Shown: in pieces, positions 29 through 57,896 of the stretch | How the letters are laid out: every line of letters begins with the position of its first letter | Numbering within the stretch: the stretch's first letter is position 1 | Virus record (IMG/VR): IMGVR_UViG_3300042566_001780 | Coordinates: 1 to 64,000 of that record | Strand: one strand, 5' to 3' | Length of the DNA: 64,000 nt | Position numbers and translations under genes: made by a program | The notes under the pieces: model-generated | Told to the model about the DNA's origin: nothing | The model's database searches: none | Seen by the model: only the letters and a program-made list of their open reading frames with translations

Positions 29-105
29 TGGCATATAGCTCAGTTGGTAGTAGCAAGTGACTGTTAATCACTAGGTCCCTGGTTCGAGCCCAGGTATGCC
101 AGCCA
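29..105 (+). tRNA. trnN: tRNA-Asn(GTT)
   Basis: Acceptor TGGCATA/TATGCCA, D arm, anticodon arm AGTGA-CTGTTAA-TCACT, T loop TTCGAGC, G73 and encoded CCA. Confidence 0.95.
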
Positions 106-133
106 GTTTTAAACTTTTTGAAGAACTTCAAAA

Positions 134-337
134 ATGCTCAAAGATCGAAAAGCCCTTCTTGAAGATGAAATCAGGAAGAATCACAAGAAAGCCGCAGACC
201 TCTATCTCATGATGGTCTCTGGTACAAAGAAAACTGTTGAAGATCACTCAGAAGAGTATGAACTTTTGAAAGCTAAACTGACTGATCTTCGATTTGAATT
301 GAATTTAGTTGATTCCCTGATTTCTCAAGGCAATTAA
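134..337 (+). CDS. Small hypothetical coiled-coil protein (67 aa)
   Basis: ATG ORF with upstream AGAAG between tRNA genes; helical, charged composition. Confidence 0.65.
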   Translation: MLKDRKALLEDEIRKNHKKAADLYLMMVSGTKKTVEDHSEEYELLKAKLTDLRFELNLVDSLISQGN

Positions 338-345
338 TAATTTTG

Positions 346-511
346 TGCCCGTGTAGTTGAGTGGTAAAAACAGACACTGAGTTGCAGCAATTCTAGACAT
401 GATGCAACAATGCTTTCATAACACGAAGGTAGTAGATCGGCCGGTTTGCTATCTGATTATGAGAGTGTAAAGGTGGAAGGTCGTGGGTTCGAGTCCCTCC
501 ATGGGTAGCCA
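346..511 (+). ncRNA. tRNA-like RNA with ~85-nt structured insertion replacing the anticodon loop
   Basis: Acceptor (T)GCCCGTG/CATGGGT(A), D arm GTT-GAGTGGTAAA-AAC, stem ACACT(374-378)/AGTGT(464-468), T arm GTGGG-TTCGAGT-CCCTC, terminal GCCA; internal 12-bp hairpin 427-454. Confidence 0.75.
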
Positions 512-652
512 TATCAAAGTGTTCATTGTTAGGTTCCTCTGATTATCCTAAGGTGTCATCAGAGCAGGGTCCTTGGAATTACAAGGAAGAAGAATGAGGA
601 AACTCATTTGGAAGGCAAGTGCAAATCCCCCTGGTGAATTCTTTGATATGGT
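508..652 (+). ncRNA. Putative multi-branched structured RNA between tRNA genes
   Basis: 12-bp closing stem GCCATATCAAAG/CTTTGATATGGT; hairpins 537-564, 570-587 and 593-608 (GAAA tetraloop); no ORF. Confidence 0.55.
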
Positions 653-660
653 TTAAAGAT

Positions 661-737
661 GCCGTTGTGATGGAATTGGTATACGTGTCTGATTCAAAAT
701 CAGAATTCTGTGGGTTCGAGTCCCACCAGCGGCACCA
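661..737 (+). tRNA. trnL: tRNA-Leu(CAA), short variable arm
   Basis: GCCGTTG/CAGCGGC acceptor, TCTGA-TTCAAAA-TCAGA anticodon arm, 5-nt variable loop, A73, CCA. Confidence 0.9.
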
Positions 738-742
738 TCAGT

Positions 743-836
743 TTTCCAAAACACATAGTCTCGCCGTTAGGCTAGCATGACGGATTATTGTTAGAGACCT
801 TGCATGATTAGACTTGAGTGCAATGTGTTTTGGGAA
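743..836 (+). ncRNA. Putative pseudoknotted small RNA
   Basis: 14-bp closing stem 743-756/823-836; GTCTC/GAGAC; hairpin 764-783 whose loop CTAGCA can pair with TGTTAG 789-794. Confidence 0.55.
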
Positions 837-847
837 TTATAGTTTTT

Positions 848-924
848 CTGCCCTTGGCGCAACTGAATAGCGCAACTGCCTTCTAAGCAGTAGGTTGTGG
901 GTTTGACTCCCGCAGGGCAGGCCA
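848..924 (+). tRNA. trnR: tRNA-Arg(TCT)
   Basis: CTGCCCT/AGGGCAG acceptor, ACTGC-CTTCTAA-GCAGT anticodon arm, CCA; T loop TTTGACT and D loop lacking GG are non-canonical. Confidence 0.88.
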
Positions 925-946
925 TTCATTTTTAATCAACCAAAAA

Positions 947-957
947 TGTGATACAAT
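947..957 (+). promoter_or_regulatory. Early-type extended -10 promoter TGTGATACAAT
   Basis: Matches the recurring motif; upstream of the 1008/1214 gene pair. Confidence 0.5.
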
Positions 958-969
958 CAATCTATGGAA

Positions 970-977
970 CTAAATAG
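970..977 (+). promoter_or_regulatory. Putative late promoter CTAAATAG
   Basis: Same 8-mer found upstream of many structural genes in this window. Confidence 0.55.
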
Positions 978-1007
978 CTTATTGTTATACCACTAACTTT
1001 TTGAAGG

Positions 1008-1217
1008 TTGAATATGAATTTGATGAATGAAGTTCTTCAAGTCTCTTTGATTGAAGAAGACATCCAAGAAAACGGCGCTGGCTTCAAAGCTGAGGACCTC
1101 CGCCAAGTTATTCAGTGTGTTACTACACTGAATGAGCAACAGCTCTCTGAGCCTCTTGAAGCTGATGACTTCCTTGCTCAAATGCGCAAAGAAGGTCTTT
1201 TGCCTGGAGGTGAATGA
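1008..1217 (+). CDS. Putative acidic antitoxin (69 aa)
   Basis: Small acidic ORF coupled by an ATGA overlap to the downstream RelE/YafQ-like gene. Confidence 0.55.
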   Translation: MNMNLMNEVLQVSLIEEDIQENGAGFKAEDLRQVIQCVTTLNEQQLSEPLEADDFLAQMRKEGLLPGGE

Positions 1218-1630
1218 AAATGGCAAAAGCAAGTAACGCCCCAGCAAAGAAGGTCGTTTTTCAAAGAACAGGTTTGTTCAATGACACCTTCGCAAACTAT
1301 GCAAATAATGCTACTGTGACAGCTAAGTTTGAGGATTTCATTGCCTTCAAGCGTCAGAATCCTCTTTTGCCTTATGGTAGCAAAGACGAACATTTCAAGG
1401 GCAATGGTCCCTTAGGTCAATCTAAAGTTATTCACGTTCACTTAACGCATAACGTCAATTTAATCTATAGTCGTGCCGGCAGTAATCCTATGACTATCAC
1501 TTTAATTTGGATTGGCGTTCATGATGAAATGGGCACAGGGCAACCACCAAATGCAAAGTTGCAAAAGAATGCTGCAGCAAAATTCTTAGCTGCTAAACCA
1601 GAAGGAAAAGTTTTTGAAAATGGAAAATGA
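1214..1630 (+). CDS. RelE/YafQ-like ribosome-dependent mRNA interferase
   Basis: Pattern PYGSKDEHFKG...IHVHL..NVNLIY...ITLIWIGVHDEM resembles YafQ KDHxLxG...CHI..D.LLIY...TGSH. Confidence 0.7.
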   Translation: MKMAKASNAPAKKVVFQRTGLFNDTFANYANNATVTAKFEDFIAFKRQNPLLPYGSKDEHFKGNGPLGQSKVIHVHLTHNVNLIYSRAGSNPMTITLIWIGVHDEMGTGQPPNAKLQKNAAAKFLAAKPEGKVFENGK

Positions 1631-1711
1631 TGTAAGATGGTCTCTTACGACTGCCTGCTAAGCAGTTCGTCCAGTCAAATGGATTCGGTTCGATCCCGAC
1701 GTTTTCCGCCA
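1622..1711 (+). tRNA. trnS: tRNA-Ser(GCT) with 8/4 acceptor/T-stem architecture
   Basis: 8-bp acceptor GGAAAATG/CGTTTTCC, 4-bp T stem TCGG/CCGA, 5-bp D stem GTAAG/CTTAC, anticodon GCT, long variable arm TCCA/TGGA, G73, CCA. Confidence 0.85.
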
Positions 1712-1728
1712 TAATAAGGAACTAGAAA

Positions 1729-2403
1729 ATGAAAAAAGTTATTGAGATTAGGCCTGCTGAAGGCGGTGAAGATTCTAAGTTGTTTGTCAGTGATCTGGCA
1801 AACGCATATGTGAAGTTGTCCATGAAAAAGGGCTGAAAGCACCAGCTGTCAGATTGTGATTCTTACACAACAATCACAATTACTGGTCACGATTTGACAG
1901 CTCTATCTCAAGAAGCCGGTGGTCACAGAATTCAGCGAGTACCGCCAACTGAAAGAAAATGTCGGGTACACACATCAACTGTTACTGTAGCAGTTCTAGA
2001 TGGTGATTCTTTAGTTGGCACAATTGCACTAGATCAAAAAGATCTCAAGCTTGAATGGTATTCTGGTACTGGATGTGGTGGCCAAAATCGTAATAAGGTG
2101 ATGGCTTCTTGTAGATTGACGCACGTTCCAACAGGAATTGTGAAAACGTCCCAAACAAGAAGCCGCGAAACTTCTTATGCTCAAGCATTGACTGCATTAA
2201 CTCAAGCAGTCAATGAAGGTTTGACAAAATCAAAGTTGAGCCAATTCAATCAAATTCGTAAGAATCAGGTTGGAAGTGGCGAACGCGGTGATAAAATAAG
2301 AACTTATCGATTTCAAGATGATTCAGTAAAAGATCATCGCACAAACAAAAGTGCTTCTGTTGCAAAAGTAATGAATGGTCATTTTGACCTTCTTTGGAAA
2401 TAA
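1729..2403 (+). CDS. RF1-type peptide chain release factor homolog lacking domain 1, with in-frame TGA at 1834-1836
   Basis: ATG 1729 with AAGGA RBS gives MKKVIEIRPAEGGEDSKLF..., in frame with GHRIQRVPPTE (PxT), GTGCGGQNRNK (GGQ) and GERGDKIRTYRF; the TGA occupies the conserved Trp position of RF1 (xxGW). Confidence 0.88.
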
Positions 2404-2405
2404 TA

Positions 2406-2678
2406 ATGGCTAAGTTGAATGCACGACAAATTGGTGAATTGGAAGCTCGGCAATTCTTGGGTGATGATGTTTGGAAGGCTTACAAAACTGATTATGATCA
2501 GTTGATGGCTTTTCGCAAAACACTTAAGGGAAAACCGACTGAAGAACAGAAAATCATTTTGGCTGCTAATAATGCGTTCATTGATTTTTATGGGAGCATT
2601 TTGTTCCATTCTGCAAGGTTGGCTTCTAGTGGAAAATGTGACTGCACGCGTTGCGGAAAGATTCGCAACGCTAAATAA
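2406..2678 (+). CDS. Hypothetical protein with C-terminal CxCxxC cluster
   Basis: ATG directly after the RF stop; ends ...KCDCTRCGK. Confidence 0.6.
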   Translation: MAKLNARQIGELEARQFLGDDVWKAYKTDYDQLMAFRKTLKGKPTEEQKIILAANNAFIDFYGSILFHSARLASSGKCDCTRCGKIRNAK

Positions 2679-2714
2679 TCTTAGTGCTATCACTATTCTC
2701 AAAGAAAGATTCTT

Positions 2715-3089
2715 ATGAAACTCGAAAACCTCGTTATTGACAAAAAGCCTGATACAAAAGCAGCTACTACTTCTGCTCCAGAGGAAACTCCGGGTGGTGC
2801 CACTGTGATGATCTTGAATGATCCTATCACTCCAGCAGAAGTTGTAGTTGAAGCTATCATGCATGGTACTGGATTGTCGAAACAGGCTGCTATGAAGCGC
2901 ATGATGCGTGCTCATCGTAATGGTTGGGTGCCTATTGCTTCTTATGCTACTAAAGACATTGCTGAAACGATTGCAAACAAAATCGAGCAACACGCTCGAA
3001 ACAATCCGAACTATGACCACTATCGTCCATTTGTTCGTCATAACGGACCTTGGCCGCTAGCTGTTGAAGTAATGGATGCTGAACAATGA
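2715..3089 (+). CDS. clpS: ClpS-like Clp protease adaptor
   Basis: VMILNDPITPAEVVVEAI...MMRAHRNG...YATKDIAETI matches the ClpS core. Confidence 0.85.
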   Translation: MKLENLVIDKKPDTKAATTSAPEETPGGATVMILNDPITPAEVVVEAIMHGTGLSKQAAMKRMMRAHRNGWVPIASYATKDIAETIANKIEQHARNNPNYDHYRPFVRHNGPWPLAVEVMDAEQ

Positions 3090-3095
3090 AATGAT

Positions 3096-3172
3096 GCACC
3101 GATGACGGAGCGGTCTAACGTCTACGCCTGCAAAGCGTGTGTTCCCAGGTTCAAATCCTGGTCGGTGCTCCA
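3096..3172 (+). tRNA. trnC: tRNA-Cys(GCA)
   Basis: GCACCGA/TCGGTGC acceptor, anticodon GCA, U73 discriminator, CCA. Confidence 0.95.
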
Positions 3173-3245
3173 AAGTTTTTGCTACTCAAGTGATGAGGAA
3201 GACATCTCGGTGATTGTGACAAATCATCAACAAAATGAGTAGCTA

Positions 3246-3276
3246 TTGAACAAATGATGAGTTTTTGTGATATAAT
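3246..3276 (+). promoter_or_regulatory. Early-type promoter (TTGAAC ... TGTGATATAAT)
   Basis: Extended -10 at 3266-3276; possible -35 TTGAAC with a long (19 nt) spacer. Confidence 0.55.
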
Positions 3277-3284
3277 TCACCTAC

Positions 3285-3367
3285 AAACTCTTCATAAACT
3301 GAATCTTGCTTCTATTACCAACGTTTTTGCCGAAACACCAGGGTGAGATTCAGTTTATGAGTAGTTT
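3285..3367 (+). ncRNA. Long stem-loop RNA immediately downstream of promoter
   Basis: 18-bp stem 3292-3309/3343-3360 plus AAACT/AGTTT; pyrimidine-rich loop starting TTCTA. Confidence 0.5.
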
Positions 3368-3371
3368 TATT

Positions 3372-3445
3372 GGGACCTTAATTTAAAAGCAAAATGTCTC
3401 CCTTACATGGAGAATTCGGCGGGGCAGTACCGTCAGGTCCTACCA
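3372..3445 (+). tRNA. trnV: Non-canonical tRNA-Val(TAC)
   Basis: GGGACCT/AGGTCCT acceptor, TCTCC-CTTACAT-GGAGA anticodon arm, A73, CCA; T loop GGCAGTA instead of TTCRAAT; D loop without GG. Confidence 0.75.
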
Positions 3446-3479
3446 CATTTTTCAAAATCTAGAATAGATTTACTTTTTC

Positions 3480-3638
3480 AGACGGCTATTTGATCAGCTA
3501 CTTCTACATCTTAATTACTGTTTTGCTGATCACGCTTTCCGTCTACACTTTTCAAGTTGGCTACTAATTCAGTTACTTCATAATCGCATCAGCGGTTGCA
3601 AAAACCGCTACCATTCCACTGAATTTCCTTTCCAATTT
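3480..3638 (+). ncRNA. Two tandem copies of a structured RNA motif (GG-CTAYT-N8-TACTTC...N8'-NNCTTT-CC)
   Basis: Copy 1 at 3480-3544 (stem TGATCAGC/GCTGATCA) and copy 2 at 3554-3638 (stem AATTCAGT/ACTGAATT): different stem sequences, same geometry and same loop motifs. Confidence 0.7.
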
Positions 3639-3658
3639 CATTTTTTGAAAGTTTCATC

Positions 3659-5788
3659 ATGAACAAGCTCTCCATTGCATTTGCAAACAATCTCGCCATC
3701 ATTCCGACCCATGATAATGGCGATACCAAAAATACCGCTCTTGCAATGAGTGTTCAAGCTGAACTAATGAATGTCGGCTTCATGTTGAGCAAAGAAGCTT
3801 TCTCTTATCTTGAGACACGCACTGAGTCTTTCATTGCATCCTTCCATAACGGTATCATTCCTCTTGCAAAATCCGCAAAGGGCGTCACTAGCAAGAAGTA
3901 TTCTCCACTTTGGAAGAACTTCCCAATTGATGTTATGGCTGCATCTGATGCAGAGCTCTACATCACTGCGCTTATCCATTACTGGACTAATGGTACTTGG
4001 TCACCAGACGCGGAGCTGAAGGCTCGCGGTTTTGCTTTTGAAAAGAAAAACTTTATTGAGCTAAAGCTTGCTCCTGAAAATTGGGAGCAAAGTCTTGTCA
4101 ATGATTTGGCGGCTTTCACCAAACCGCTTGATCCCACCAATCTAAATAACCTGGTGTGGCTTGCGCAGAACTGTCAAGTCACCATTCCGGAAGTTTCTGT
4201 CAAAGAAACTATGGCAGCTTTGGCTGTAGCTGGAATTCCAGTGAAGGTGAAATCTCCTGTTGATGTGCTGCGGATTGCAGTCGGCATGTCTGGTGGCGAT
4301 ATGGCTCTCCCTTCTATGCCAAAAATCCCGCAAATGAAGGATAAGAGCTTGATGCGTGGCAGCTACGCATTTAATGCAAAAGTACAAGAAGCTAATGCGT
4401 TGCGTGAAACTTTCAAATTCAAGAAGTTCACTCGAAGCGAACGCCGGTACATCCTTGGATTGCTTGAGTCGCTGAAATTTGTTGATGAAGCAGAAATGCA
4501 GCGTCATCTTGGCCGTTGGGTTCGTCTTGGCGAAGTTCTCCATCCAGGCGAAATGAAGAGCAAGTTTCCAAAAGCAGCAGCTGCATTCTCCAAGATTCGC
4601 AATCAAGAAGAAGTGAAGGTTCGTACCTTTGCTGGTCGTGTTGATCTGGCGTTCAAGCAATCTCCTGATGTTGGTATGCAAGTTCTTCAAGAACGTCCTG
4701 GTGAATTTGCACGTCGTCTTGATGCACTGGTTCGTAATGAAAAGCATGATGCACAGCAGGTGATTGATCGATTTGCAGAAGTTGCAGGCAAAGTGTCGAC
4801 TAAAGTGCTGTTCGAGATGTTTGATCATTTTGAAGGTCGCTTGAAGGACAAGCCGCGTATGGTCATGATCAAGGGTAAAGGTTCCAAGGTTAAGAATCTG
4901 GAAACTCTCCCGAAACTGCCAGATCATATTGTGGAAAATATCCAGAAGATGATCAAGCAACAATTGGCTAATCGCGCTGCAAAGTTGCCAGCAATGGGTA
5001 ATGTGTTTGTTGATGATCAACTGCTGAATATGCCGGTGCCATATTCTATGCAATCCTCTGCAGAGGGTACTTCTACTTTGGTTCGCGGTACTCGCATGCC
5101 AATTGTTGAAGGTGCCAATACACTGCGTGGGTTTGTTCACTGGTATGATGAGAATGGCGATGACGACATTGATTTGTCGGCTACGTTCCTGGGCGCAAAG
5201 TTTGAAATTCTTGGTGAATGTGCATTCTATGATCTGCGGTCCACGAATTTGAAGGCGTATCACTCTGGTGATGTTCGCCATCGTATTGGGCATAATGCAG
5301 AGTACATTGACTTTGATTTGAATTCTGCTAAGGAACATGGTGTCAAGTATGTGGTGTTCTCTGCATACAATTTCAATGGTAATGCCATTAAGTCTGTACC
5401 TGAATGCACCTTTGGCGTGATGGAGCGTTCTAAGCCAAAAAGCAATGAGATCTTTGACCCAGCTACTGCCCCACAAGCTATCAAAGTTCAGGCAAATAGC
5501 AATTCGGTGTTTCCTGTCATGATTGATGTGGAAGCACATGAATGGATTTGGTTGGATCTTGAATCTGAAGGTCGAGGCTTTGCTTCTTTCCATAGTAATT
5601 CTTCTACTCTTGACAAAATCAAGGCATTCACACAACAAGCAAAGTTCAGTGTCTATGATCTGATTTCTCTGCATGTTGGCAGTCGCTCTGGTACCATTGT
5701 GAACAAGATGGAAGATGCTGATCTCATCTATTCGTATGACGACATTGTTCGAAACTATTCGAAACTGACTGAGTTCTTGAACATCTAA
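3659..5788 (+). CDS. ROT/TROVE-like helical protein fused to C-terminal TerD domain (709 aa)
   Basis: Helical N-region with RPGEFARRLDALVR; C-terminal TerD-like segment (W...DDIDLSATF...HSGDVR...AEYIDFDL...YVVFSAYNF); architecture recalled for the Prok-RING_4-associated family, but no RING finger here. Confidence 0.65.
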   Translation: MNKLSIAFANNLAIIPTHDNGDTKNTALAMSVQAELMNVGFMLSKEAFSYLETRTESFIASFHNGIIPLAKSAKGVTSKKYSPLWKNFPIDVMAASDAELYITALIHYWTNGTWSPDAELKARGFAFEKKNFIELKLAPENWEQSLVNDLAAFTKPLDPTNLNNLVWLAQNCQVTIPEVSVKETMAALAVAGIPVKVKSPVDVLRIAVGMSGGDMALPSMPKIPQMKDKSLMRGSYAFNAKVQEANALRETFKFKKFTRSERRYILGLLESLKFVDEAEMQRHLGRWVRLGEVLHPGEMKSKFPKAAAAFSKIRNQEEVKVRTFAGRVDLAFKQSPDVGMQVLQERPGEFARRLDALVRNEKHDAQQVIDRFAEVAGKVSTKVLFEMFDHFEGRLKDKPRMVMIKGKGSKVKNLETLPKLPDHIVENIQKMIKQQLANRAAKLPAMGNVFVDDQLLNMPVPYSMQSSAEGTSTLVRGTRMPIVEGANTLRGFVHWYDENGDDDIDLSATFLGAKFEILGECAFYDLRSTNLKAYHSGDVRHRIGHNAEYIDFDLNSAKEHGVKYVVFSAYNFNGNAIKSVPECTFGVMERSKPKSNEIFDPATAPQAIKVQANSNSVFPVMIDVEAHEWIWLDLESEGRGFASFHSNSSTLDKIKAFTQQAKFSVYDLISLHVGSRSGTIVNKMEDADLIYSYDDIVRNYSKLTEFLNI

Positions 5789-5807
5789 AGAAGTTCAAGT
5801 CAAAAAG

Positions 5808-5832
5808 AAAAGGGAAGCATTTGCTTCCCTTT
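5808..5832 (+). terminator. Intrinsic terminator
   Basis: AAAGGGAAGC-ATTT-GCTTCCCTTT followed by a T-rich tail. Confidence 0.8.
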
Positions 5833-5839
5833 GTTGTTT

Positions 5840-5847
5840 CTAAATAG
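5840..5847 (+). promoter_or_regulatory. Putative late promoter CTAAATAG
   Basis: Recurring motif, 25 nt upstream of ATG 5872. Confidence 0.65.
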
Positions 5848-5871
5848 GTCTTAAGACAGTAAGGATTTCAT

Positions 5872-6402
5872 ATGAAGCTAACAGACCTATTTGAAACACA
5901 TTTTTCAGATGATAATTTTGATGATTTAGATTTTGGATCGGAAGATCTCATTAGATTGACACCGCGCATTTCTGATAAGACACTTAGAAAAACAATTTCT
6001 GAAAATGTTGAAATCCATTTTGTCAATTTCCTCAGCAAGTACTGGGTACTTACCGTAGATAGGGAACCCGTCGCTTTCTTGCAGTTGGGCTATCTATTTG
6101 AAGTAGCCGATTCCTATTACATGACAGTGGAACTTATCTACGCGGCTCCTAAAATTAGGAAATCAATTTTGTTAGGAAAGTTCTTTTTAGAGCTCAAGCC
6201 ACTGTTGAGTCACCCACTTATTATTGGGGCTGGTGATTGGGGTGGAGTAACCTACAAACATGGTACGATCCTAATCAGGAAGTTAGCAAAATCCCATCGA
6301 TTCAAACTCCAATCCTTAGACCTAAGGACTGGTGAACTATCAGACTTTGATCCCGAGACTGACATGGTATCAACCAAAGGAAAGACTATAGTCTTCAAAT
6401 AA
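5872..6402 (+). CDS. Hypothetical late protein (176 aa)
   Basis: AAGGA RBS, late motif upstream; N-terminus MKLTDLFE. Confidence 0.7.
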   Translation: MKLTDLFETHFSDDNFDDLDFGSEDLIRLTPRISDKTLRKTISENVEIHFVNFLSKYWVLTVDREPVAFLQLGYLFEVADSYYMTVELIYAAPKIRKSILLGKFFLELKPLLSHPLIIGAGDWGGVTYKHGTILIRKLAKSHRFKLQSLDLRTGELSDFDPETDMVSTKGKTIVFK

Positions 6403-6488: not shown

Positions 6489-8459
6489 TCACTCTGCTAT
6501 AGTTGAGAACCCATGTTCTTTCTGCACTATGAGTTTCTTATCAAGTCTACCATCAATTAGTGGATGATGCGAAATAACATAGATTGATAGGGCTTCATCA
6601 CGACTCTTATTCTTCAAAATGCCAGTGATTGCATCAATACCACCAGGATCTAATTGACCATCAAGCTCATCAATCAACAAAATGTTGAATTGATTGTGCA
6701 ATCGGTGCAACACATCCCTAAAAGCTAAAGATAGAGCAGTATTTACCCGGCGTTTTTCGCCAGCAGACAAATTACCAAAGTCAAGTTCTCTACCATATTC
6801 AGAAACGGTGCAACTCATGTCGGCATCAAACTTGACGATATGGGGAAGACCAAGAGATGATGTGTAAAAGTTGATTCGGTCATTCAAAAATGGAACAGAG
6901 CGGTTAATAATTCTTTTTCGAATAAAAGAATCTTTACCAGTCAGTAACTTTAGCAAAAATTGTTGGTGATCAAGGCGCTTTTTGAGAGCATCAACCTTAG
7001 CTGTATCAATCACAACCTCATCTTCTAGCATAAGTTGCTCAAGAGTCGAGACATACGGATTTTCAGTTGATGCAAGATCCTCAATCCGCTGTTTGGAGAT
7101 GGCAGCATTCTGCCGTGCTTTCAACAAAATCTCAAGATTAGGCTTAGTGATTTTTGCCTTGACATCTTTCAACTTTTCTTGAAGAACAGCAAGATCAGAA
7201 TTAGATGCAGCTAATTCTGTATTCTTTAAATCAAGAGCAGTATTGTTCTCGATTAAAGATGTCTTAAGTGCTTCAAGTTTGTCTTTTGCTTCTGCATAAT
7301 CTTGCAAACAATAAGGACATTTGGCATCTTCCAAATGAGCAATATCATCCTGCTGCTTTTTGATTGTTTTCTGTAGATTGCTAATTGCTAACTTGATAGG
7401 TGTCAGTTTTGCATTTTGATTAGAAATTTGCAAAGTCAGTTGATCGCGTTCAGCATGCAGTAATTGTTCAGCTTCAAGATCATCAGATGATACTAAATCA
7501 AGTTCAGCTTGAAGCTTCTTGATTTCTGTATCTCGATTAGTTTCCCAGTTCAAAGCACGTTTTTCTGCATCATTGATGTGCTTTTTCTGTGTATCACGAG
7601 CTTGTTGTTGTTGAACAATAATTGCTTCTTGAACTTTAATATCACCTTCAGTTTGCTTTATAAGCTCTTTTAGCTTTACTGCTTTTTCTGAAAGAAGGGT
7701 GATGTTAAGCAGCTCTTCAATATGAAGTCGTTGCTGAGCAATAGGCAGTGCTAAGAATGCCTGAGAATTACCAGAGAAGATGACCGTTTTGGTAAACAGT
7801 TCAAAAGAAATTCCAATGATGTCTTGGATAAAATTGTCGCACTCAGTAACACCTTTGCCTGGTGTAATATCATCACCATTCTTTGTGATTGAGATTGAAT
7901 ATGATTCTCCACGAGAGCGAATGATTTCATATTCATCCAATCCTTTAGTGAAAGAAATACCAACCTGCATCAACGTGTTTTTTGTAGCATTTGTGCTATT
8001 GATAAGTCGTTGAAGACTAATGTTATCGAATGGCTTGTTGAATAGGACATAGCAGAGTGCATTAATGATAGTAGTGTTGTGAGATACTATATCGTTAGTA
8101 TAGTATCGATGATCATCAGAATCTACCTGAACATCGTACATATTTTCAAATCGATCAGTTTGAATAATCGACTTGATTTCACTATCACCAGCCCGTGTTT
8201 TTATTTTGTTGCCAACTTTAAGGTTCTTGACAAAAATTTCGTTGAAACTTTCATCAAACACAATGTGATCATCAGCACACTCAAGAGTAAATCCATCCCC
8301 AGTTTCAAGAATGAAAACTTGATACTGGATAGTCTTAACTACTTTTGAAATAGGTTGAAAACCACTATCAGTCTCAATCTCAAAATTTGAAACATCAAAG
8401 CTTTCAAGAATTTTTCGACTGACTATTTCTGAAGGTTTAAACAATTGGTTATGATTCAT
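6489..8459 (-). CDS. gp46: Rad50/SbcC/gp46 ATPase, C-terminal fragment with 128-aa N-terminal split-intein C-half
   Basis: Intein blocks LECADDHIVF and MYDVQV...YYTNDIVSHN|T; then TTIINAL, coiled coil, Zn hook CPYC, signature LSAGEK, Walker B LLIDELD. Confidence 0.9.
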   Translation of the reverse strand: MNHNQLFKPSEIVSRKILESFDVSNFEIETDSGFQPISKVVKTIQYQVFILETGDGFTLECADDHIVFDESFNEIFVKNLKVGNKIKTRAGDSEIKSIIQTDRFENMYDVQVDSDDHRYYTNDIVSHNTTIINALCYVLFNKPFDNISLQRLINSTNATKNTLMQVGISFTKGLDEYEIIRSRGESYSISITKNGDDITPGKGVTECDNFIQDIIGISFELFTKTVIFSGNSQAFLALPIAQQRLHIEELLNITLLSEKAVKLKELIKQTEGDIKVQEAIIVQQQQARDTQKKHINDAEKRALNWETNRDTEIKKLQAELDLVSSDDLEAEQLLHAERDQLTLQISNQNAKLTPIKLAISNLQKTIKKQQDDIAHLEDAKCPYCLQDYAEAKDKLEALKTSLIENNTALDLKNTELAASNSDLAVLQEKLKDVKAKITKPNLEILLKARQNAAISKQRIEDLASTENPYVSTLEQLMLEDEVVIDTAKVDALKKRLDHQQFLLKLLTGKDSFIRKRIINRSVPFLNDRINFYTSSLGLPHIVKFDADMSCTVSEYGRELDFGNLSAGEKRRVNTALSLAFRDVLHRLHNQFNILLIDELDGQLDPGGIDAITGILKNKSRDEALSIYVISHHPLIDGRLDKKLIVQKEHGFSTIAE

Positions 8460-54503: not shown

Positions 54504-56113
54504 TCAAAATTTGAACACGGAATTGATATAGCTTCCTTGCAGCGTTGGCTTTTCAATTCCCATTGCATCAAAGATACCTTCAATTTTTGAGTCAATCAAT
54601 TTTTCTTCTGTTAGCGCCATATCAATCCTGAAGTTTTCGTTGAACCATTGAGGAATATGCATTAAGTCAGAAGGGAATGCGATTGATTTAAGACCGAACT
54701 CATTGGGCATTAAGTAAAAAACGACACCTTTATCACCTGATTTGATCATAGGTGCATCAGGTTGGAATTGAGTAATTAGTTCATTGTAGTTGATTGCTGC
54801 TCTTACATGTCCTGGGAGATTAATCTTCTTATTGTTCTTTTTCTCATTCAACGTCCAATCAGCATACAACTTGTCGAGGTTATTAATCTGCTTAGCGCCG
54901 CCAAGAGCAAGAACATCTTCCGACTTATGAATCAATTTACCACGAGATTCATTGACTAGTTTTTCAATATCTGAATACGGCTTTTTATCAAGAATCAAAT
55001 CCATCAGTTTCTTCAAGAAATCTTGAATGACTTTAGGAGTGTCGGCTTTCTTGATTTCTGAACCCATCGATTTCAGTTTAGGTTTTTCACGAAGATCAAG
55101 ACCTTCTAAGTTGACTACTTTAAGCGTGTACTTTTTCTTTGCAGTCAAGAATAAACCAGTTTCTGCAACTACTTCACGTGCTACCTTAATAAGATCTTCA
55201 CGACCTTCAGTACAGTTGAAACTCTTTTTCATGAATGCTGAGAACATGTCATTCACTGTAGAAGCAACATCATCAGCAATAGTTACAGCATCTTCATAGT
55301 TGTCGACAGGAATGCTGAAATACGCAGAGTCGGTATCAGAATAGATGCACTGAGTGTTTTTCGAATAGTAGAATGCGCCATAGCATGGATGCGCAGTTCC
55401 CTTGTACATTAGCAGTTCGCCAGCCCGCGTTGGGAATTTTTCCAACTCGTTCCATTTGCAATGCTTACGGTATAAAGCTAGATCATCACTTGAAATGACT
55501 GTTTTATATGAAGATCGAGTTTCACCTTCATCAGTAACTGTAGTTACCAAACGAGATGGTGCATAGCGTTTTTCAATAACACACTCTTGACCAGACACTA
55601 ATTCGCCAATAGTCTCATTCATGAAATGCGTAATTTGACGCCCACACCCGGTTACTGATGCGCCAACCTCTCGCCGCCCAAATCTGAAGGCCACGTTAAG
55701 AAGAGAACCGTACGTGCTGTTCCTTAGTGTTACGGTGATATCGTTTCCATATCACCTCTCATTGTTGCCAATGAGAGCAGACTATATCATCATCCACATG
55801 GGATGCCGGGCGCTTCGAGATCACTTGACCCCTACGAGCATATGCTCTAGTCGTTGCACCTTCCGTGTTAGCGGCTTGGCTCAGGATTGTCCACTTGGGA
55901 GTTTCCCTGAATTCACCCGGTTTTCGACAACCATTGCTGATTGAAGGCTCTAAATCAAAGCTGAATTTTTTTCGTAAGCTGTAAAAGATCGTAGTGTTCT
56001 GCTTGTTGAGCAGCATATTGGATCTTTTCATATTCTTCTCGTGTATACAGTTTGCTTCCATCAAGAATCAAACTGCCATTTTTTATTCCTGTTCTAATTT
56101 CATCAATGTTCAT
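54504..56113 (-). CDS. gp43: Family B DNA polymerase C-terminal subunit; exon 1 56113-55958, exon 2 55721-54504
   Basis: Splicing restores motif B LQLTKKIQL|NSTYG; motif C YSDTDS; KKKY; ATG 56113 overlaps the end of the N-terminal gene. Confidence 0.85.
55722..55957 (-). mobile_element. Group I self-splicing intron (236 nt, no homing endonuclease ORF)
   Basis: 5' exon ends in U (GCUU paired with GAGC in P1); intron ends in G; core GGTGAATTCAGGGAAACTC, AATCCTGAGCCAAG, AAGGTGCAACGACT, GATATAGTCT. Confidence 0.92.
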
Positions 56114-57896
56114 TTTTCAGTTGTTCCAAAATGTCCTCAGTCAATTTTATGCCAGTTACTTCTTTCAATGAAATCATTTCCTTGGTCCATTTCTTCTTTT
56201 CTGCTTGCAATCGTTTACGCTCAGAAAACCAGAATGTCAAAGTGTCTGCTACCATCCCAATCTTATTTTGATCAAACACTGTTCCATAAGCAGAGATTGC
56301 CCAGTTCATATCCTTCATAATCTGTTTCCACTCTTTGCCGGTCTTCTGCTCTGGAGCAAATTCATCAAACTCGAGTGTCCATTGATTTGCATCTTCAGCT
56401 ACAATTCCCAACCAAGCATATTCGCCTTCTGCAAACTGTCCGATAACAGTTTCACGCGACATGTTCAAGGCGCGAATCACTGATGGATACAGCGAGTTAA
56501 TGTCAACAGATGCCACCCAATCATGCAAACCTGCAAGCGGTGTAAGAACCAGGGCACCCTCAACCTTTTCGTTTGCATGCTCAATAATTTCTTTGTTGAA
56601 ACAAACTAGATTATGAACATGATGGGCACGATTCATAATACCAGTTTCAACATATCGAACAGTACCCATGATAGCTACAAATGGCACTGTATTTTCGTGA
56701 GCCATTTGATTGACAAGTTGAATGAATTTGTACTTATCATCAAGCATAACTAGAAGCTGAACGTCATGCAAGTTATAAGCAACAAATTTTAAGAATGAAG
56801 CATCTTTGAATTCTCTATCAATCTCTTCATATTCCTTTTTCAAAGACACATCATTTACAGATTCACGTTTTAACCATGCTCGAATATTAGCTAGGCGAAG
56901 AACTTCATCTTCAATTTCTAGAATTTGCTCAAAGGTTGTACGAGAAATATCTGGCTCAAATGTACCTTTGTAAAGCTGCTCAAGCGTGCCTTCATAATCA
57001 AGCTTTGGAATTCCTAGTTCTTCAAGACCAATGTTTCCAAGAGAGTATGAAGTGCGACCTTCGAAGGTGAACTTCTTGAAGGCATCCAGGTAATCCAGGT
57101 GTGTTCTACCATAAAGCTGATAGACTATAGCAGGCGAGCCAAACCGCATCACTGTGGACTCACGTGGTGCTTGCGCGCCTTTAAAGGACATCCTTGCTAC
57201 AATCTTATCGCCATAAACTCGCTGAATTCGCTTGACAATATATGGAATATCGAAGAACTCAGAGTTCCAACCGCTGATAATGTCAAGATCCTCAATCTCT
57301 TCCAGAAAACCTGCTAGCAACTCTTTTTCATTGGCGCATAGATAGATTTCTGGAAAAATCTTGACATCATGTGCAAGTAGAACCTTCTTTAATCGATCTT
57401 CAAATCCGACTTTACCATTCCAACCAGGAGGAGGAACTGCAAAAGTCACATACTTCTTTGAATTTGAGTGGTAGATAGTGACTGCGTTGATGGGAGCATA
57501 TGGATTCTCTGGAGATGAGAAACCCAAACCTGCTGCCGAAGAATAGTCTGTTTCAATATCGATAAAGCCATAATTGATGATAGGCGTAGGACGATCGTAA
57601 TATTCATCCATCAGCACTCGAGCTGCAGGCTGAACATCAGATTCAAACTTTACTCTGTATGACCTACACAAGTTGTTGAATTCTTCTTCATCGTAACAAT
57701 CAACGCGCTTTACAGTTTCTCCAGTGATTGTTTTTCTATCACCATTTTCATCAGGGACGTAAAAATATCTAGGGGCATCATACTCAACCAGAGTACGAGG
57801 CCCACCTTCAATTGGTCGTTCCCAAACTAACACTTTATCTGACTTACGGTCATGATAAGCAGAGATGAAATTTGTTAGTTTCTTAGGTTGTGTCAT
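56103..57896 (-). CDS. gp43: Family B DNA polymerase N-terminal subunit (3'-5' exonuclease plus motif A)
   Basis: FIDIETD, GWNSEFFDIPY, YNLHDV, VEGALV, SVDINSLYPS; ends after the first finger helix. Confidence 0.92.
   Translation of the reverse strand: MTQPKKLTNFISAYHDRKSDKVLVWERPIEGGPRTLVEYDAPRYFYVPDENGDRKTITGETVKRVDCYDEEEFNNLCRSYRVKFESDVQPAARVLMDEYYDRPTPIINYGFIDIETDYSSAAGLGFSSPENPYAPINAVTIYHSNSKKYVTFAVPPPGWNGKVGFEDRLKKVLLAHDVKIFPEIYLCANEKELLAGFLEEIEDLDIISGWNSEFFDIPYIVKRIQRVYGDKIVARMSFKGAQAPRESTVMRFGSPAIVYQLYGRTHLDYLDAFKKFTFEGRTSYSLGNIGLEELGIPKLDYEGTLEQLYKGTFEPDISRTTFEQILEIEDEVLRLANIRAWLKRESVNDVSLKKEYEEIDREFKDASFLKFVAYNLHDVQLLVMLDDKYKFIQLVNQMAHENTVPFVAIMGTVRYVETGIMNRAHHVHNLVCFNKEIIEHANEKVEGALVLTPLAGLHDWVASVDINSLYPSVIRALNMSRETVIGQFAEGEYAWLGIVAEDANQWTLEFDEFAPEQKTGKEWKQIMKDMNWAISAYGTVFDQNKIGMVADTLTFWFSERKRLQAEKKKWTKEMISLKEVTGIKLTEDILEQLKNEH

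What the first reader, a model, noticed from the sequence alone, without database searches (positions are those of the whole stretch)
29..5788. Compact translation-control island: RelE-like nuclease, stop-gated release factor, ClpS, Ro-like protein and odd tRNAs
Within 5.8 kb the phage clusters an A-site mRNA cutter, a GGQ peptidyl-tRNA hydrolase lacking domain 1, a proteolysis adaptor, a ROT/TROVE-TerD protein with its own RNA motif, and many structurally deviant tRNAs and tRNA mimics. The individual calls come from sequence motifs. That they act together is inference: for example, generating and rescuing stalled ribosomes, or protecting translation from host anticodon nucleases and TA-based abortive infection.
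Basis: inference. Interest (0 to 1): 0.7.

Follow-up and report, generated by a model that had tools for sequence, protein, structure and literature searches.

The report
Phage tRNA island, UGA-gated release factor
A jumbo lake-water phage places several translation-related genes inside a transfer-RNA gene cluster, and one of them, a shortened release factor, always carries a built-in UGA stop codon followed by a conserved hairpin, which looks like an undescribed case of programmed stop-codon readthrough.

Summary

- **ORF 1214-1630:** it has a RelE/YoeB/YafQ fold. An acidic upstream partner is predicted to bind it.
- **ORF 1729-2403:** this is an RF1-type release factor (PPT and GGQ motifs) without domain 1. 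An in-frame TGA interrupts it at codon 36.
- **ORF 2715-3089:** ClpS.
- **ORF 3659-5788:** the C-terminal half is a TerD fold. The "TROVE" label rests only on weak, whole-length similarity to Ro60 structures.
- **RNAs:** five ordinary or near-ordinary tRNAs, three deviant tRNA-like RNAs and several covarying hairpins.

The strongest result concerns the release factor. All 88 homologous phage genes I examined have TGA at the position of a conserved RF1 tryptophan. A covarying 16-bp hairpin starts 7 nt downstream of it. That is the signature of a programmed recoding site, not a pseudogene.

The claim that the genes act together is only partly supported:
- The four-gene set recurs only in one close relative.
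- RelE-like, GNAT-like and RF genes recur together in a second lineage.
- The RF family and the TerD family each lie beside tRNA arrays in most phage loci, independently of one another.

The best reading is a tRNA-array hub that collects translation genes, not an obligate module.

The parts
29..105 (+). tRNA-Asn(GUU), canonical, CCA encoded
   Evidence: ARAGORN; Rfam tRNA 61.6 bits
134..337 (+). 67-aa ORF, probably coiled coil, function unknown
   Evidence: Listed. No family match. No homologue detected at the corresponding place in L002 by tblastn or gene calls.
346..511 (+). Deviant tRNA-like RNA. The acceptor, D and T arms are normal, and a CCA follows. About 105 nt forming two hairpins replace the 17-nt anticodon arm.
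   Evidence: Rfam tRNA 35.2 bits with a 105-nt insertion. Fold. The 3' part, including the hairpin with a GGCC loop, is conserved at L002 1-100.
508..657 (+). Structured intergenic RNA closed by a 12-bp stem; absent from L002
   Evidence: MFE -54.4 kcal/mol, z -5.4, 0 of 200 shuffles as stable. L002 has only a 22-nt spacer here.
661..737 (+). tRNA-Leu(CAA)
848..924 (+). tRNA-Arg(UCU). In L002 its counterpart is split by a group I intron.
1008..1217 (+). Acidic 67-69-aa ORF that overlaps the next gene by ATGA; antitoxin-like partner
   Evidence: 14 D/E against 4 K/R. Homologous small ORFs abut the toxin-like gene in L002, L171 and L172. Predicted complex ipSAE 0.81 against a best control of 0.01.
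1214..1630 (+). 138-aa RelE/YoeB/YafQ-fold protein (toxin-like mRNA endonuclease) with a basic C-terminal extension
1622..1711 (+). tRNA-Ser(GCU)-like RNA with a 6-7-bp D stem and a 4-5-nt D loop. It overlaps the last 9 nt of the preceding ORF.
   Evidence: ARAGORN, but not reported by Rfam even at E 5. Cloverleaf MFE z -3.0. Read by eye, the D and anticodon stems show compensatory changes in L002 1733-1822.
1729..2403 (+). RF1-type class I release factor gene without domain 1 (224 codons), with an in-frame TGA at codon 36
1834..1836 (+). In-frame UGA, at the position of the conserved Trp in the RF1 'KGW' motif
   Evidence: TGA in 87 of 87 genes scanned, plus L225. It aligns with W of Thermotoga RF1. 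It is unchanged in the DNA strains X2 and X6 and in a contig from RNA library X24.
1844..1902 (+). Hairpin 7 nt 3' of the UGA (arms 1844-1862 and 1884-1902); candidate recoding stimulator
   Evidence: RNAalifold consensus of 16 pairs, 10 of them with compensatory changes. 93.2% of cells are paired against 26-44% in slid controls; 84 double-change cells against 7-16; 0 of 500 shuffles reach the observed values. Third codon positions here are unusually conserved.
2394..2678 (+). 94-aa ORF with a C-terminal CxC..C motif; unknown function; conserved in L002
   Evidence: no family match
2715..3089 (+). ClpS homologue (124 aa) with Ala at the gatekeeper Met position
   Evidence: Pfam PF02617 49 bits against a cut-off of 23. 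Best PDB hit is ClpS entry 3g1b, E 7e-6.
3096..3172 (+). tRNA-Cys(GCA)
3247..3276 (+). Promoter-like site with an extended -10 (TGnTATAAT)
   Evidence: 10 of 12 consensus matches plus TG. A matching TGTTATAAT is present in L002.
3285..3370 (+). Long hairpin RNA: about 25 bp of stem and a conserved 31-nt loop
   Evidence: z -5.3, 0 of 200 shuffles as stable. Stem changes are compensated in L002 3395-3465 and the loop is conserved. No Rfam family matches.
3372..3448 (+). tRNA-like RNA, Val(UAC) type, with an AU-only D arm, a non-canonical T loop and an ACCA end; absent from L002
   Evidence: Found only in ARAGORN's relaxed (mitochondrial) mode. Fold.
3480..3545 (+). Second covarying hairpin, together with a twice-repeated GGCTAnnnAnTnAGnTACTTC motif, upstream of the 709-aa gene
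   Evidence: z -3.7. Compensatory changes in L002 are read directly.
3659..5788 (+). 709-aa protein: an N-terminal alpha-helical repeat region followed by a TerD beta-sandwich (about 473-656). It is a RING-less relative of NF041916.
   Evidence: tRNA-array association
5809..5832 (.). Bidirectional terminator-like hairpin that closes the + strand block
5872..6402 (+). 176-aa phage GNAT-like protein. It lies just outside the finding, but its homologue sits directly upstream of the RF gene in L225.

Best explanation
The segment is one end of a tRNA-gene region of a jumbo phage (at least 290 kb) from lake water. As in many large phages, this region has collected genes that act on translation.

**Release factor.** This is the best-defined element. 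The protein keeps every RF1 codon-reading and catalytic element: the GGxD/E helix tip, Q-R-V-P-P-T, H-T-S and GGQ. It lacks the domain that contacts the L11 stalk and RF3. Its mRNA carries a programmed recoding site, a UGA at codon 36 with a hairpin 7 nt downstream. Full-length protein can be made only when a ribosome reads through that UGA. The most likely route is near-cognate tRNA-Trp, which would restore the ancestral tryptophan. Output of the phage factor would then depend on the balance between UGA termination by host RF2 and UGA decoding in the infected cell.

**Other members.**
- The RelE-like protein and its acidic partner form a toxin-antitoxin-like pair.
- ClpS probably redirects ClpAP substrate choice.
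- The TerD-family protein is a phage protein tied to loci of structured RNAs (tRNA arrays, GOLLD RNA, tmRNA) and may bind RNA.

**Shown and inferred.**
- Shown: the gene identities, the invariant UGA, the covarying hairpin, the coding constraint on both sides of the UGA, and the associations with tRNA arrays.
- Inferred: readthrough as the mechanism, Trp as the inserted residue, sensing of RF2, and any cooperation among the proteins.
For: **The RF gene is functional and recoded.**
- TGA is at codon 36 in 87 of 87 homologous genes, 74 of them with distinct sequences, plus L225.
- Codons 2-35 vary mostly at third positions: 0.20, 0.15 and 0.52 pairwise differences per codon position.
- Codons 47-64 also show a coding pattern. 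The first in-frame start after the stop falls anywhere from codon 40 to codon 72, so no conserved restart site exists.
- Third positions of codons 37-46 and 56-59 are 0.74-0.99 conserved (one of them 0.55-0.58 in each run), against 0.35-0.7 elsewhere. These codons form the arms of a hairpin with strong covariation.
- The UGA aligns with W of RF1 'KGW'.
- Independent strains and a contig from an RNA library keep the TGA.
- TGA is the commonest genuine stop in this genome, and standard-code ORFs cover 94% of it.

**RelE-like pair:**

**ClpS:**

**TerD domain:**

**Hub idea.**
- 642 tRNAs lie in 721 kb around RF genes, and 68 of 84 loci have at least one.
- 388 tRNAs lie in 908 kb around TerD-family genes, and 50 of 80 loci have at least one. 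All are on the gene's strand, and the array usually ends 200-700 nt upstream.
- GOLLD RNA, tmRNA and long tRNA-like genes lie beside the TerD-family gene in other phages.
- RelE-like, GNAT-like and RF genes recur together in L225 and L226.
Against: - No protein or ribosome-profiling data exist. The one contig from an RNA library could be contaminating DNA.
- The PPT motif predicts UAA/UAG specificity, so the factor would not read its own UGA. Simple prfB-style self-regulation is therefore not obvious.
- The RF loci sampled from IMG/VR are mostly one clade (68-88% identity to the query protein of the scan, P0156), so their synteny is partly inherited.
- The RelE-like family lies near tRNAs in only 9 of 53 phage loci.
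- ClpS and the TerD-family gene do not accompany RF elsewhere.
- tRNA regions of phages are known insertion hot spots, so co-location may carry no functional meaning.
Confidence: 0.6

Rival explanations
1. Hitch-hiking. The tRNA region is a variable insertion hot spot. The RelE-like pair, RF, ClpS and the TerD-family gene landed there independently and have no functional connection with each other or with the tRNAs.
For: - The four-gene combination occurs only in the window and its close relative L002.
- The region varies even between these two. The elements at 508-657 and 3372-3448 are missing from L002, and L002 has an intron in tRNA-Arg.
- The RelE-like family is usually not near tRNAs: 44 of 53 loci have none within 5 kb.
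Against: - Two unrelated protein families, RF and TerD, each sit beside tRNA arrays in most loci. For the TerD family this holds across identities of 25-40%.
- RelE-like, GNAT-like and RF genes recur together in a lineage with only 33%, 27% and 56% protein identity to the window's copies.
Confidence: 0.3
2. The UGA and hairpin form an autoregulatory terminator. The phage factor, despite its PPT motif, also recognises UGA (relaxed or omnipotent specificity), perhaps because domain 1 is lost. It then ends its own synthesis at codon 36 when abundant, as RF2 does at the prfB frameshift site.
For: - A conserved in-frame stop in a release-factor gene has a known precedent in prfB, which is autoregulated (established knowledge).
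- TGA is the phage's commonest stop, so a UGA-reading factor would be useful to it.
Against: - All RF1-specific reading residues are kept.
- The protein scores far better against RF1 than RF2: 164 against 103 bits, and E 1e-39 against 1e-22.
Confidence: 0.15
3. The UGA encodes selenocysteine, and the downstream hairpin is a SECIS-like element.
For: A hairpin immediately 3' of an in-frame UGA is the bacterial arrangement for Sec insertion (established knowledge). The hairpin is conserved.
Against: - The homologous residue in cellular RF1 is Trp, not Cys.
- The apical loop is about 24 nt long and variable, with no conserved small loop.
- No tRNA-Sec is found in the 292-kb record.
- Sec would have no obvious role at that structural position.
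Confidence: 0.05
4. The release-factor gene is a pseudogene, or two separate genes: a 35-aa peptide and an internally initiated 169-aa GGQ protein.
For: Gene callers split it this way.
Against: - The TGA is invariant in 88 genes while flanking third positions are saturated.
- The 35-aa piece is under purifying selection.
- There is no conserved restart codon.
- Coding constraint is seen upstream of the first available start.
- The two pieces are contiguous halves of one PCRF domain.
Confidence: 0.05

Closest known systems
prfB (RF2) programmed +1 frameshift at an in-frame UGA
   Same: A release-factor gene is interrupted early by an in-frame UGA. Its decoding competes with termination, so expression is coupled to termination efficiency.
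   Different: - Here the frame does not change, which points to readthrough rather than frameshift.
- There is no Shine-Dalgarno-like slippery site.
- The stimulator is a 3' hairpin.
- The factor is RF1-type, so by its motif it should not read the UGA itself.
- The UGA replaces a conserved Trp codon.
RF1 of TGA-recoded Jade phages and RF2 of TAG-recoded Lak/Agate phages ('code change module', bioRxiv 10.1101/2021.08.26.457843)
   Same: Phage-encoded class I release factors lie beside tRNA genes and are proposed to reshape stop-codon use during infection.
   Different: - This phage uses the standard code throughout.
- The module described in that paper is encoded in standard code, and no in-frame stop in its RF is reported.
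- Here the factor lacks domain 1 and is itself the gene that carries the in-frame TGA.
PrfH (RFH) of the RtcB-PrfH ribosome rescue and repair pair
   Same: A GGQ release-factor paralogue that lacks domain 1 and is linked to conflict over the translation apparatus (PMC6514570).
   Different: - The match to TIGR03072 is 33 bits against a cut-off of 166.65.
- The phage protein keeps the RF1 tripeptide and codon-reading residues.
- There is no RtcB in the 292-kb record.
YafQ-DinJ and YoeB-YefM type II toxin-antitoxin pairs
   Same: The fold is the same (TM by target 0.70-0.78), His/Tyr/Asp residues are conserved at equivalent places, and a small acidic upstream gene overlaps the start and is predicted to bind.
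   Different: - It is phage-encoded.
- It has a basic C-terminal extension of about 35 aa.
- The partner shows no recognisable DNA-binding domain.
- The window copy has Asn where the family consensus has Asp.
Ro60 (TROVE)-Y RNA ribonucleoproteins, including phage Ro60
   Same: Ro60 structures are the only ones that align over about 300 residues of the 709-aa model. The gene sits among tRNA-like and other structured RNA genes, as bacterial rsr sits beside tRNA-like Y RNAs.
   Different: - There is no TROVE sequence signal.
- Z is only 4.2-5.9.
- A TerD sandwich stands where Ro60 has a vWA domain.
- No Rfam Y RNA or YrlA match is found.
NF041916 MXAN_6230/SCO0854 family RING-domain proteins
   Same: This is the best sequence family match, 305 bits over residues 316-689. 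The Atlas finds the same overall fold.
   Different: The score is below the 600-bit cut-off, and the RING domain is absent. The phage form is a shorter relative.

Membership tests
RelE/ParE superfamily (YafQ/YoeB-like mRNA interferases) | Small alpha/beta fold: two N-terminal helices packed on an antiparallel sheet | tested here: met
   Model pLDDT 89.5. All 50 best Foldseek PDB hits are RelE-superfamily toxins, probability 1.00, TM by target up to 0.78.
RelE/ParE superfamily (YafQ/YoeB-like mRNA interferases) | Sequence-profile relationship to known members | tested here: met
   The family profile hits HP0892 at E 1.6e-4 over the whole toxin. Six of 50 family members hit Pfam YafQ_toxin. The window protein alone hits nothing.
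RelE/ParE superfamily (YafQ/YoeB-like mRNA interferases) | Adjacent cognate antitoxin that binds the toxin | tested here: met
   The upstream acidic ORF overlaps by 4 nt and is conserved in other phages. Predicted complex score 0.81 against a best control of 0.01; that mark was reached by 51 of 78 solved complexes and 2 of 108 mismatched pairs. The runs share at least 66% of contacts, and partner pLDDT is at least 58. This is a prediction, not a measurement.
RelE/ParE superfamily (YafQ/YoeB-like mRNA interferases) | Ribosome-dependent A-site mRNA cleavage; catalytic residues | not testable with these tools
   Invariant K46, D58, Y85 and H103 and near-invariant H74 suggest an active site. Activity was not assayed.
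Class I release factor RF1 (prfA equivalog) | GGQ catalytic motif and RF-1 domain | tested here: met
   PF00472 74.3 bits against a cut-off of 35. GGQ is visible in the translation.
Class I release factor RF1 (prfA equivalog) | PxT tripeptide and RF1-type codon-reading residues | tested here: met
   The string IQRVPPTERK.RVHTS is conserved and aligns with RF1. RF1 models score higher than RF2 models.
Class I release factor RF1 (prfA equivalog) | Full four-domain architecture including N-terminal domain 1; equivalog score | tested here: not met
   The protein starts at RF1 residue of about 87-112. It scores 163.6 bits against a cut-off of 400. It is RF1-derived but not a standard prfA.
PrfH (TIGR03072) | Family score, and linkage to RtcB | tested here: not met
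   33 bits against a cut-off of 166.65. No RtcB in the record.
Programmed stop-codon readthrough (recoding site) | In-frame stop conserved across diverged homologues, with coding constraint on both sides | tested here: met
   88 of 88 genes have TGA. The codon-position pattern upstream is 0.20/0.15/0.52. Coding-type conservation is seen at codons 47-64, before any conserved start.
Programmed stop-codon readthrough (recoding site) | Conserved 3' stimulatory RNA structure supported by covariation | tested here: met
   A 16-bp hairpin lies 7 nt after the UGA. 93.2% of cells are paired against at most 44% when slid. Ten pairs carry compensatory changes. 0 of 500 shuffles reach the observed values.
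Programmed stop-codon readthrough (recoding site) | Full-length product and the identity of the inserted residue | not testable with these tools
   Only a contig from an RNA library spans the site.
ClpS | ClpS domain above the curated threshold, with conserved N-degron pocket residues | tested here: met
   PF02617 49 bits against a cut-off of 23. The alignment with Caulobacter ClpS keeps the N-D..T-P.E and H.NG motifs. The gatekeeper Met is Ala, as in mutant entry 3g1b. All NCBIfam equivalog scores are below their cut-offs, so this is a divergent member.
TerD domain | TerD beta-sandwich fold | tested here: met
   Matches 3ibz at Z 14.3, 2qz7 at 12.8, and TerZ/TerD at E 8e-8, over residues 473-656. 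The Pfam TerD model does not hit the sequence.
Ro60/TROVE | TROVE sequence signature | tested here: not met
   No PF05731 hit at E up to 10 on the protein or up to 1 on the genome.
Ro60/TROVE | Helical-repeat ring followed by a vWA domain | tested here: inconclusive
   Ro60 chains 9l5y_B, 1yvp_A and 2nvo align over 290-312 residues, but only at Z 5.9, 5.8 and 4.2 with rmsd 4.6-6.2. The C-terminal domain is TerD, not vWA.
Ro60/TROVE | Partner Y RNA | tested here: inconclusive
   There is no Rfam Y_RNA or YrlA match. Covarying hairpins and tRNA-like RNAs lie directly upstream. Binding is untested.
NF041916 RING_SCO0854 | Score above the cut-off, and a RING domain | tested here: not met
   305 bits against 600. 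The match covers profile positions 381-766 only.
tRNA (for the three deviant elements) | Canonical cloverleaf above the Rfam gathering score | tested here: inconclusive
   - 347-507 passes (35.2 bits) only by skipping 105 nt.
- 1622-1711 is called by ARAGORN but not by Rfam.
- 3372-3445 is called only in relaxed mode.

The most novel reading that the evidence does not exclude
A widespread family of jumbo-phage RF1-derived release factors is expressed only through a dedicated UGA-readthrough element (an invariant UGA at the Trp-36 codon plus a 3' hairpin). This makes the phage factor a read-out of the infected cell's UGA-termination capacity, that is, RF2 activity against tRNA-Trp supply. The phage could then switch or time its termination regime. 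This would be the readthrough counterpart of prfB frameshifting, and a new class of recoding site in bacterial viruses.
Probability: 0.45. Interest if true: 0.8.

Novelty: new variant of a known kind. Interest (0 to 1): 0.72.

Why it matters
**Recoding.** Well-documented programmed stop-codon readthrough with a defined RNA stimulator is rare in bacteria and their phages. Most known cases come from RNA viruses and eukaryotes. A conserved UGA and hairpin in a release-factor gene would be a compact, directly testable recoding cassette. It also suggests that phages monitor or manipulate termination.

**Annotation.** Gene callers currently either split these genes or silently translate them with code 4. 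Public protein databases therefore hold a spurious Trp at this position. That can also mislead screens for alternative genetic codes.

**TerD-family protein.** Its link with tRNA arrays, GOLLD RNA and tmRNA genes gives a first protein handle on phage loci of large structured RNAs whose function is unknown.

Tried and rejected
- **Close relatives in the phage collection.** A megablast of the region found none. Single-protein scans of IMG/VR with the RF piece and the RelE-like protein also found nothing. Alignment-based scans were needed.
- **Alternative genetic code.** Rejected. Standard-code ORFs cover 94% of the genome and TGA is its commonest stop.
- **'W36' database homologues.** I first took these as TGG-containing relatives. 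They proved to be code-4 translations of TGA.
- **RNA editing or sequencing error at the TGA.** There is no variant at 1834-1836 in three DNA runs or in the RNA-library contig.
- **The hairpin-loop 20-mer.** Searching it in metagenomes gave four hits from one unrelated context with no stem, so these are chance matches. IMG/VR gave none.
- **Sequence searches of the 709-aa protein.** The protein and its family profile against PDB gave nothing useful.
- **Defence-system models.** PADLOC gave no hits.
- **Literature.** Searches for a phage release factor with an internal stop found no description. The library does not cover subscription journals.
- **Other interrupted genes.** Candidate TGA- or TAG-interrupted genes elsewhere in the genome were listed but not examined.

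Full report
**Setting.** The window is the first 64 kb of a 291,687-bp IMG/VR virus record, estimated 82% complete. GC content is 39.7%. The sequence occurs in a lake-water metagenome, and near relatives occur in freshwater, wastewater, sludge and groundwater runs. The phage uses the standard code. Non-overlapping ORFs called with table 11 cover 94% of the genome. TGA ends 148 of 279 long ORFs, TAA 98 and TAG 33. The non-coding stretch 3042-3658 is one of only three gaps longer than 350 nt in the whole record. Everything from 29 to 6402 is on the + strand. A terminator-like hairpin at 5809-5832 follows the 709-aa gene.

**RNA genes.** ARAGORN finds tRNA-Asn, Leu(CAA), Arg(UCU), Ser(GCU) and Cys. 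Rfam confirms four of them. It adds a 161-nt match at 347-507, where the acceptor, D and T arms are normal but 105 nt replace the anticodon arm. That insert folds into two hairpins. The hairpin with the GGCC loop, together with the T arm, is recognisable at the start of relative L002.

- The Ser(GCU) gene is not reported by Rfam. It has a 6-7-bp D stem with a tiny loop. Its D and anticodon stems carry compensatory changes in L002.
- A third odd element, 3372-3448, ends in ACCA and has a proper anticodon loop (UAC). Its D arm is AU-only and its T loop is non-canonical. It is called only in ARAGORN's relaxed mode and is absent from L002.
- Further structured RNAs:
  - 508-657 (z -5.4)
  - a long hairpin at 3285-3370 (z -5.3), downstream of a TGnTATAAT promoter-like site
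  - a hairpin at 3480-3545

  The last two show compensatory changes against L002.

None of these matches an Rfam family.

**RelE-like pair.** ORF 1214-1630 has no hit in Pfam, PHROG, NCBIfam or PADLOC. An exhaustive search found 229 cluster representatives.

- Their alignment has invariant F42, K46, D58, Y85, H103 and G107 and near-invariant H74.
- The profile hits the YafQ-like toxin HP0892 at E 1.6e-4 across its whole length. Six of 50 members hit Pfam YafQ_toxin.
- The model (pLDDT 89.5) matches only RelE-superfamily toxins among its 50 best PDB hits.
- The upstream acidic ORF overlaps the start by ATGA. It has homologues in the same position in unrelated phage contigs.
- That ORF is predicted to bind the toxin-like protein. 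The score is 0.81 against a best control of 0.01. That mark was reached by 51 of 78 solved complexes and 2 of 108 mismatched pairs. The runs share at least 66% of contacts, and partner pLDDT is at least 58.
- In 34 of 53 IMG/VR loci a 40-110-aa ORF abuts the gene.

The "A-site mRNA cutter" call is supported at the level of fold and cassette. Activity is untested.

**Release factor.** The 35 codons from 1729 match PCRF positions 103-133. After the TGA at 1834-1836 the frame continues into PCRF 165-194 and the RF-1 domain with GGQ. RF1 models score far above RF2 and PrfH models. A code-4-translated homologue (P0156) aligns with Thermotoga RF1 residues 87-314, so domain 1 is missing. In that alignment the stop falls on the W of 'KGW'.

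- The close relative L002 has the same TGA despite many synonymous differences.
- So do four unrelated large contigs, 79 of 79 IMG/VR loci that include the N-terminus and L225.
- Two short contigs whose database proteins show 'W' also have TGA. Those proteins are code-4 translations.
- In total, 88 of 88 genes have TGA (87 in the single tally, plus L225), and 74 of them differ in sequence.
- Codons 2-35 vary mainly at third positions.
- The first in-frame start after the stop falls anywhere from codon 40 to 72.
- Codons 47-64 still show coding-type conservation.

**Hairpin.** Third positions of codons 37-46 and 56-59 are abnormally conserved. RNAalifold places these codons in the two arms of a 16-bp hairpin that begins 7 nt after the UGA. 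Ten pairs show compensatory changes. On the named structure, 93.2% of cells are paired against 26-44% with slid partners. There are 84 double-change cells against 7-16. None of 500 shuffles reaches the observed values. In the window the arms are 1844-1862 and 1884-1902.

Contigs from other DNA samples at about 92% identity (X2, X6) keep the TGA. So does a 272-nt contig from a wastewater RNA library that spans 1738-2007. This combination is the standard signature of a programmed recoding site. I found no description of it in the searchable literature.

**ClpS.** ORF 2715-3089 passes the Pfam threshold and aligns with solved ClpS proteins. Its best hit is the Caulobacter M53A entry, because the phage protein has Ala at that gatekeeper position. 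Phage ClpS genes are already known in jumbo phages (PMC7824862).

**709-aa protein.** No Pfam family matches. The best match is NF041916, below its threshold and without the RING part. The family is large. The model (pLDDT 84.3) has a clear TerD sandwich at about 473-656. The helical N-terminal part matches many HEAT-like fragments of about 90 residues. Only Ro60 structures align over about 300 residues: phage phiLo Z 5.9, Xenopus Z 5.8 and Deinococcus Z 4.2. That is suggestive but below the level where helical repeats can be trusted, and TROVE is absent by sequence.

The context says more than the fold.
- In 80 phage loci with homologues of 22-50% identity (25-40% among those with nearby tRNAs), 50 have tRNAs within 5 kb.
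- Those loci hold 388 tRNAs in total, all on the gene's strand. The array usually ends 200-700 nt upstream.
- In a sample of twelve loci the neighbours also include GOLLD RNA (two loci), tmRNA (three) and tRNA-like genes of about 125 nt (two).

**Do the genes belong together?** L002 repeats the whole order. Beyond it, the specific combination dissolves. The RF gene's own frequent neighbours are:
- a DSPc-like gene in 77 of 84 loci;
- Rnl1 in 28;
- an IF1-like gene in 16;
- HD_4 in 13;
- DUF2828 in 11;
- PTH2 in 6.

In this phage the DSPc-like and HD_4 homologues lie far away. Even so, RF genes sit among tRNAs in 68 of 84 loci. In a second lineage (L225, L226) a tRNA array is followed by the acidic ORF and RelE-like gene, a 134-aa ORF, a homologue of the window's 176-aa GNAT-like ORF, then RF with its TGA, then PTH2. 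The RelE-like family as a whole is near tRNAs in only 9 of 53 loci.

I conclude that phage tRNA arrays act as hubs that repeatedly attract translation-related genes. The window's island is one lineage-specific assortment of them. Cooperation among its proteins remains inference.

**Limits.**
- There are no expression, proteomic or host data.
- The RF loci are dominated by one clade.
- The association counts are not corrected for shared ancestry.
- The residue inserted at the UGA and the codon specificity of the factor are unknown.

Noticed in passing
window 55758-55967 (-): Group I catalytic intron (Rfam 85.2 bits), lying between ORFs 54504-55694 and 56103-57896. It probably splits one gene.
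   Followed up: no
G000 141916-141992 and 165045-166741 (outside the window): An amber-suppressor-type tRNA(CUA) and a second array of 11 tRNAs that includes tRNA-Trp(CCA). TAG is the rarest stop in the genome. It is unexplained why the phage carries both a UAG suppressor and an RF1-like factor.
   Followed up: partly
L002 320-975: In the close relative, the tRNA-Arg(UCU) gene is interrupted in the anticodon loop by a group I intron (Rfam 57 bits at 507-843). The intron itself contains a tRNA-like element (603-668).
   Followed up: partly
window 5872-6402 (+); L225 5728-6336: The 176-aa ORF has a phage-specific GNAT-like fold (Atlas TM 0.62-0.69). Its homologue (E 4e-8) lies directly upstream of the RF gene in another lineage. 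GNAT toxins that acetylate aminoacyl-tRNA are a possible analogy.
   Followed up: partly
L094 4070-4476, L095 3822-4243, L147 7490-7849, L101 11476-11885, L135 10979-11295: GOLLD RNA and tmRNA genes lie beside homologues of the 709-aa TerD-family gene in other phages. Tentative 'long tRNAs' of about 125 nt lie just downstream of the gene in L101 (7718-7843) and L115 (7687-7809).
   Followed up: partly
window 2715-3089 (+): The phage ClpS has Ala at the gatekeeper Met position of the N-degron pocket, so its best PDB match is the Caulobacter M53A mutant entry. This may mean a broader N-degron specificity.
   Followed up: no
window 6489-8459 (-): The SbcC-like gene matches its PHROG only from residue 129 onward. 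The N-terminal 125 aa or so form an unexplained extension.
   Followed up: no
proteins P0125, P0154, P0156, P0226 and others; loci L090, L091: Public protein collections hold 222-237-aa versions of the phage RF with Trp at position 36. Both contigs checked (L090 and L091, for P0226 and P0154) carry TGA, so these proteins were translated with code 4. This is an annotation artefact that hides the in-frame stop.
   Followed up: yes
G000, 8 TGA and 16 TAG candidate sites (for example 128854-130593, 273575-275110, 139784-140887): These are same-frame ORF pairs separated by a single TGA or TAG elsewhere in the genome. They could be further readthrough or suppression targets, or simply adjacent genes.
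   Followed up: no
window 2394-2678 (+): A 94-aa ORF between RF and ClpS, conserved in L002, has a C-terminal Cys-rich motif and no detectable family. It overlaps the RF stop codon.
   Followed up: no
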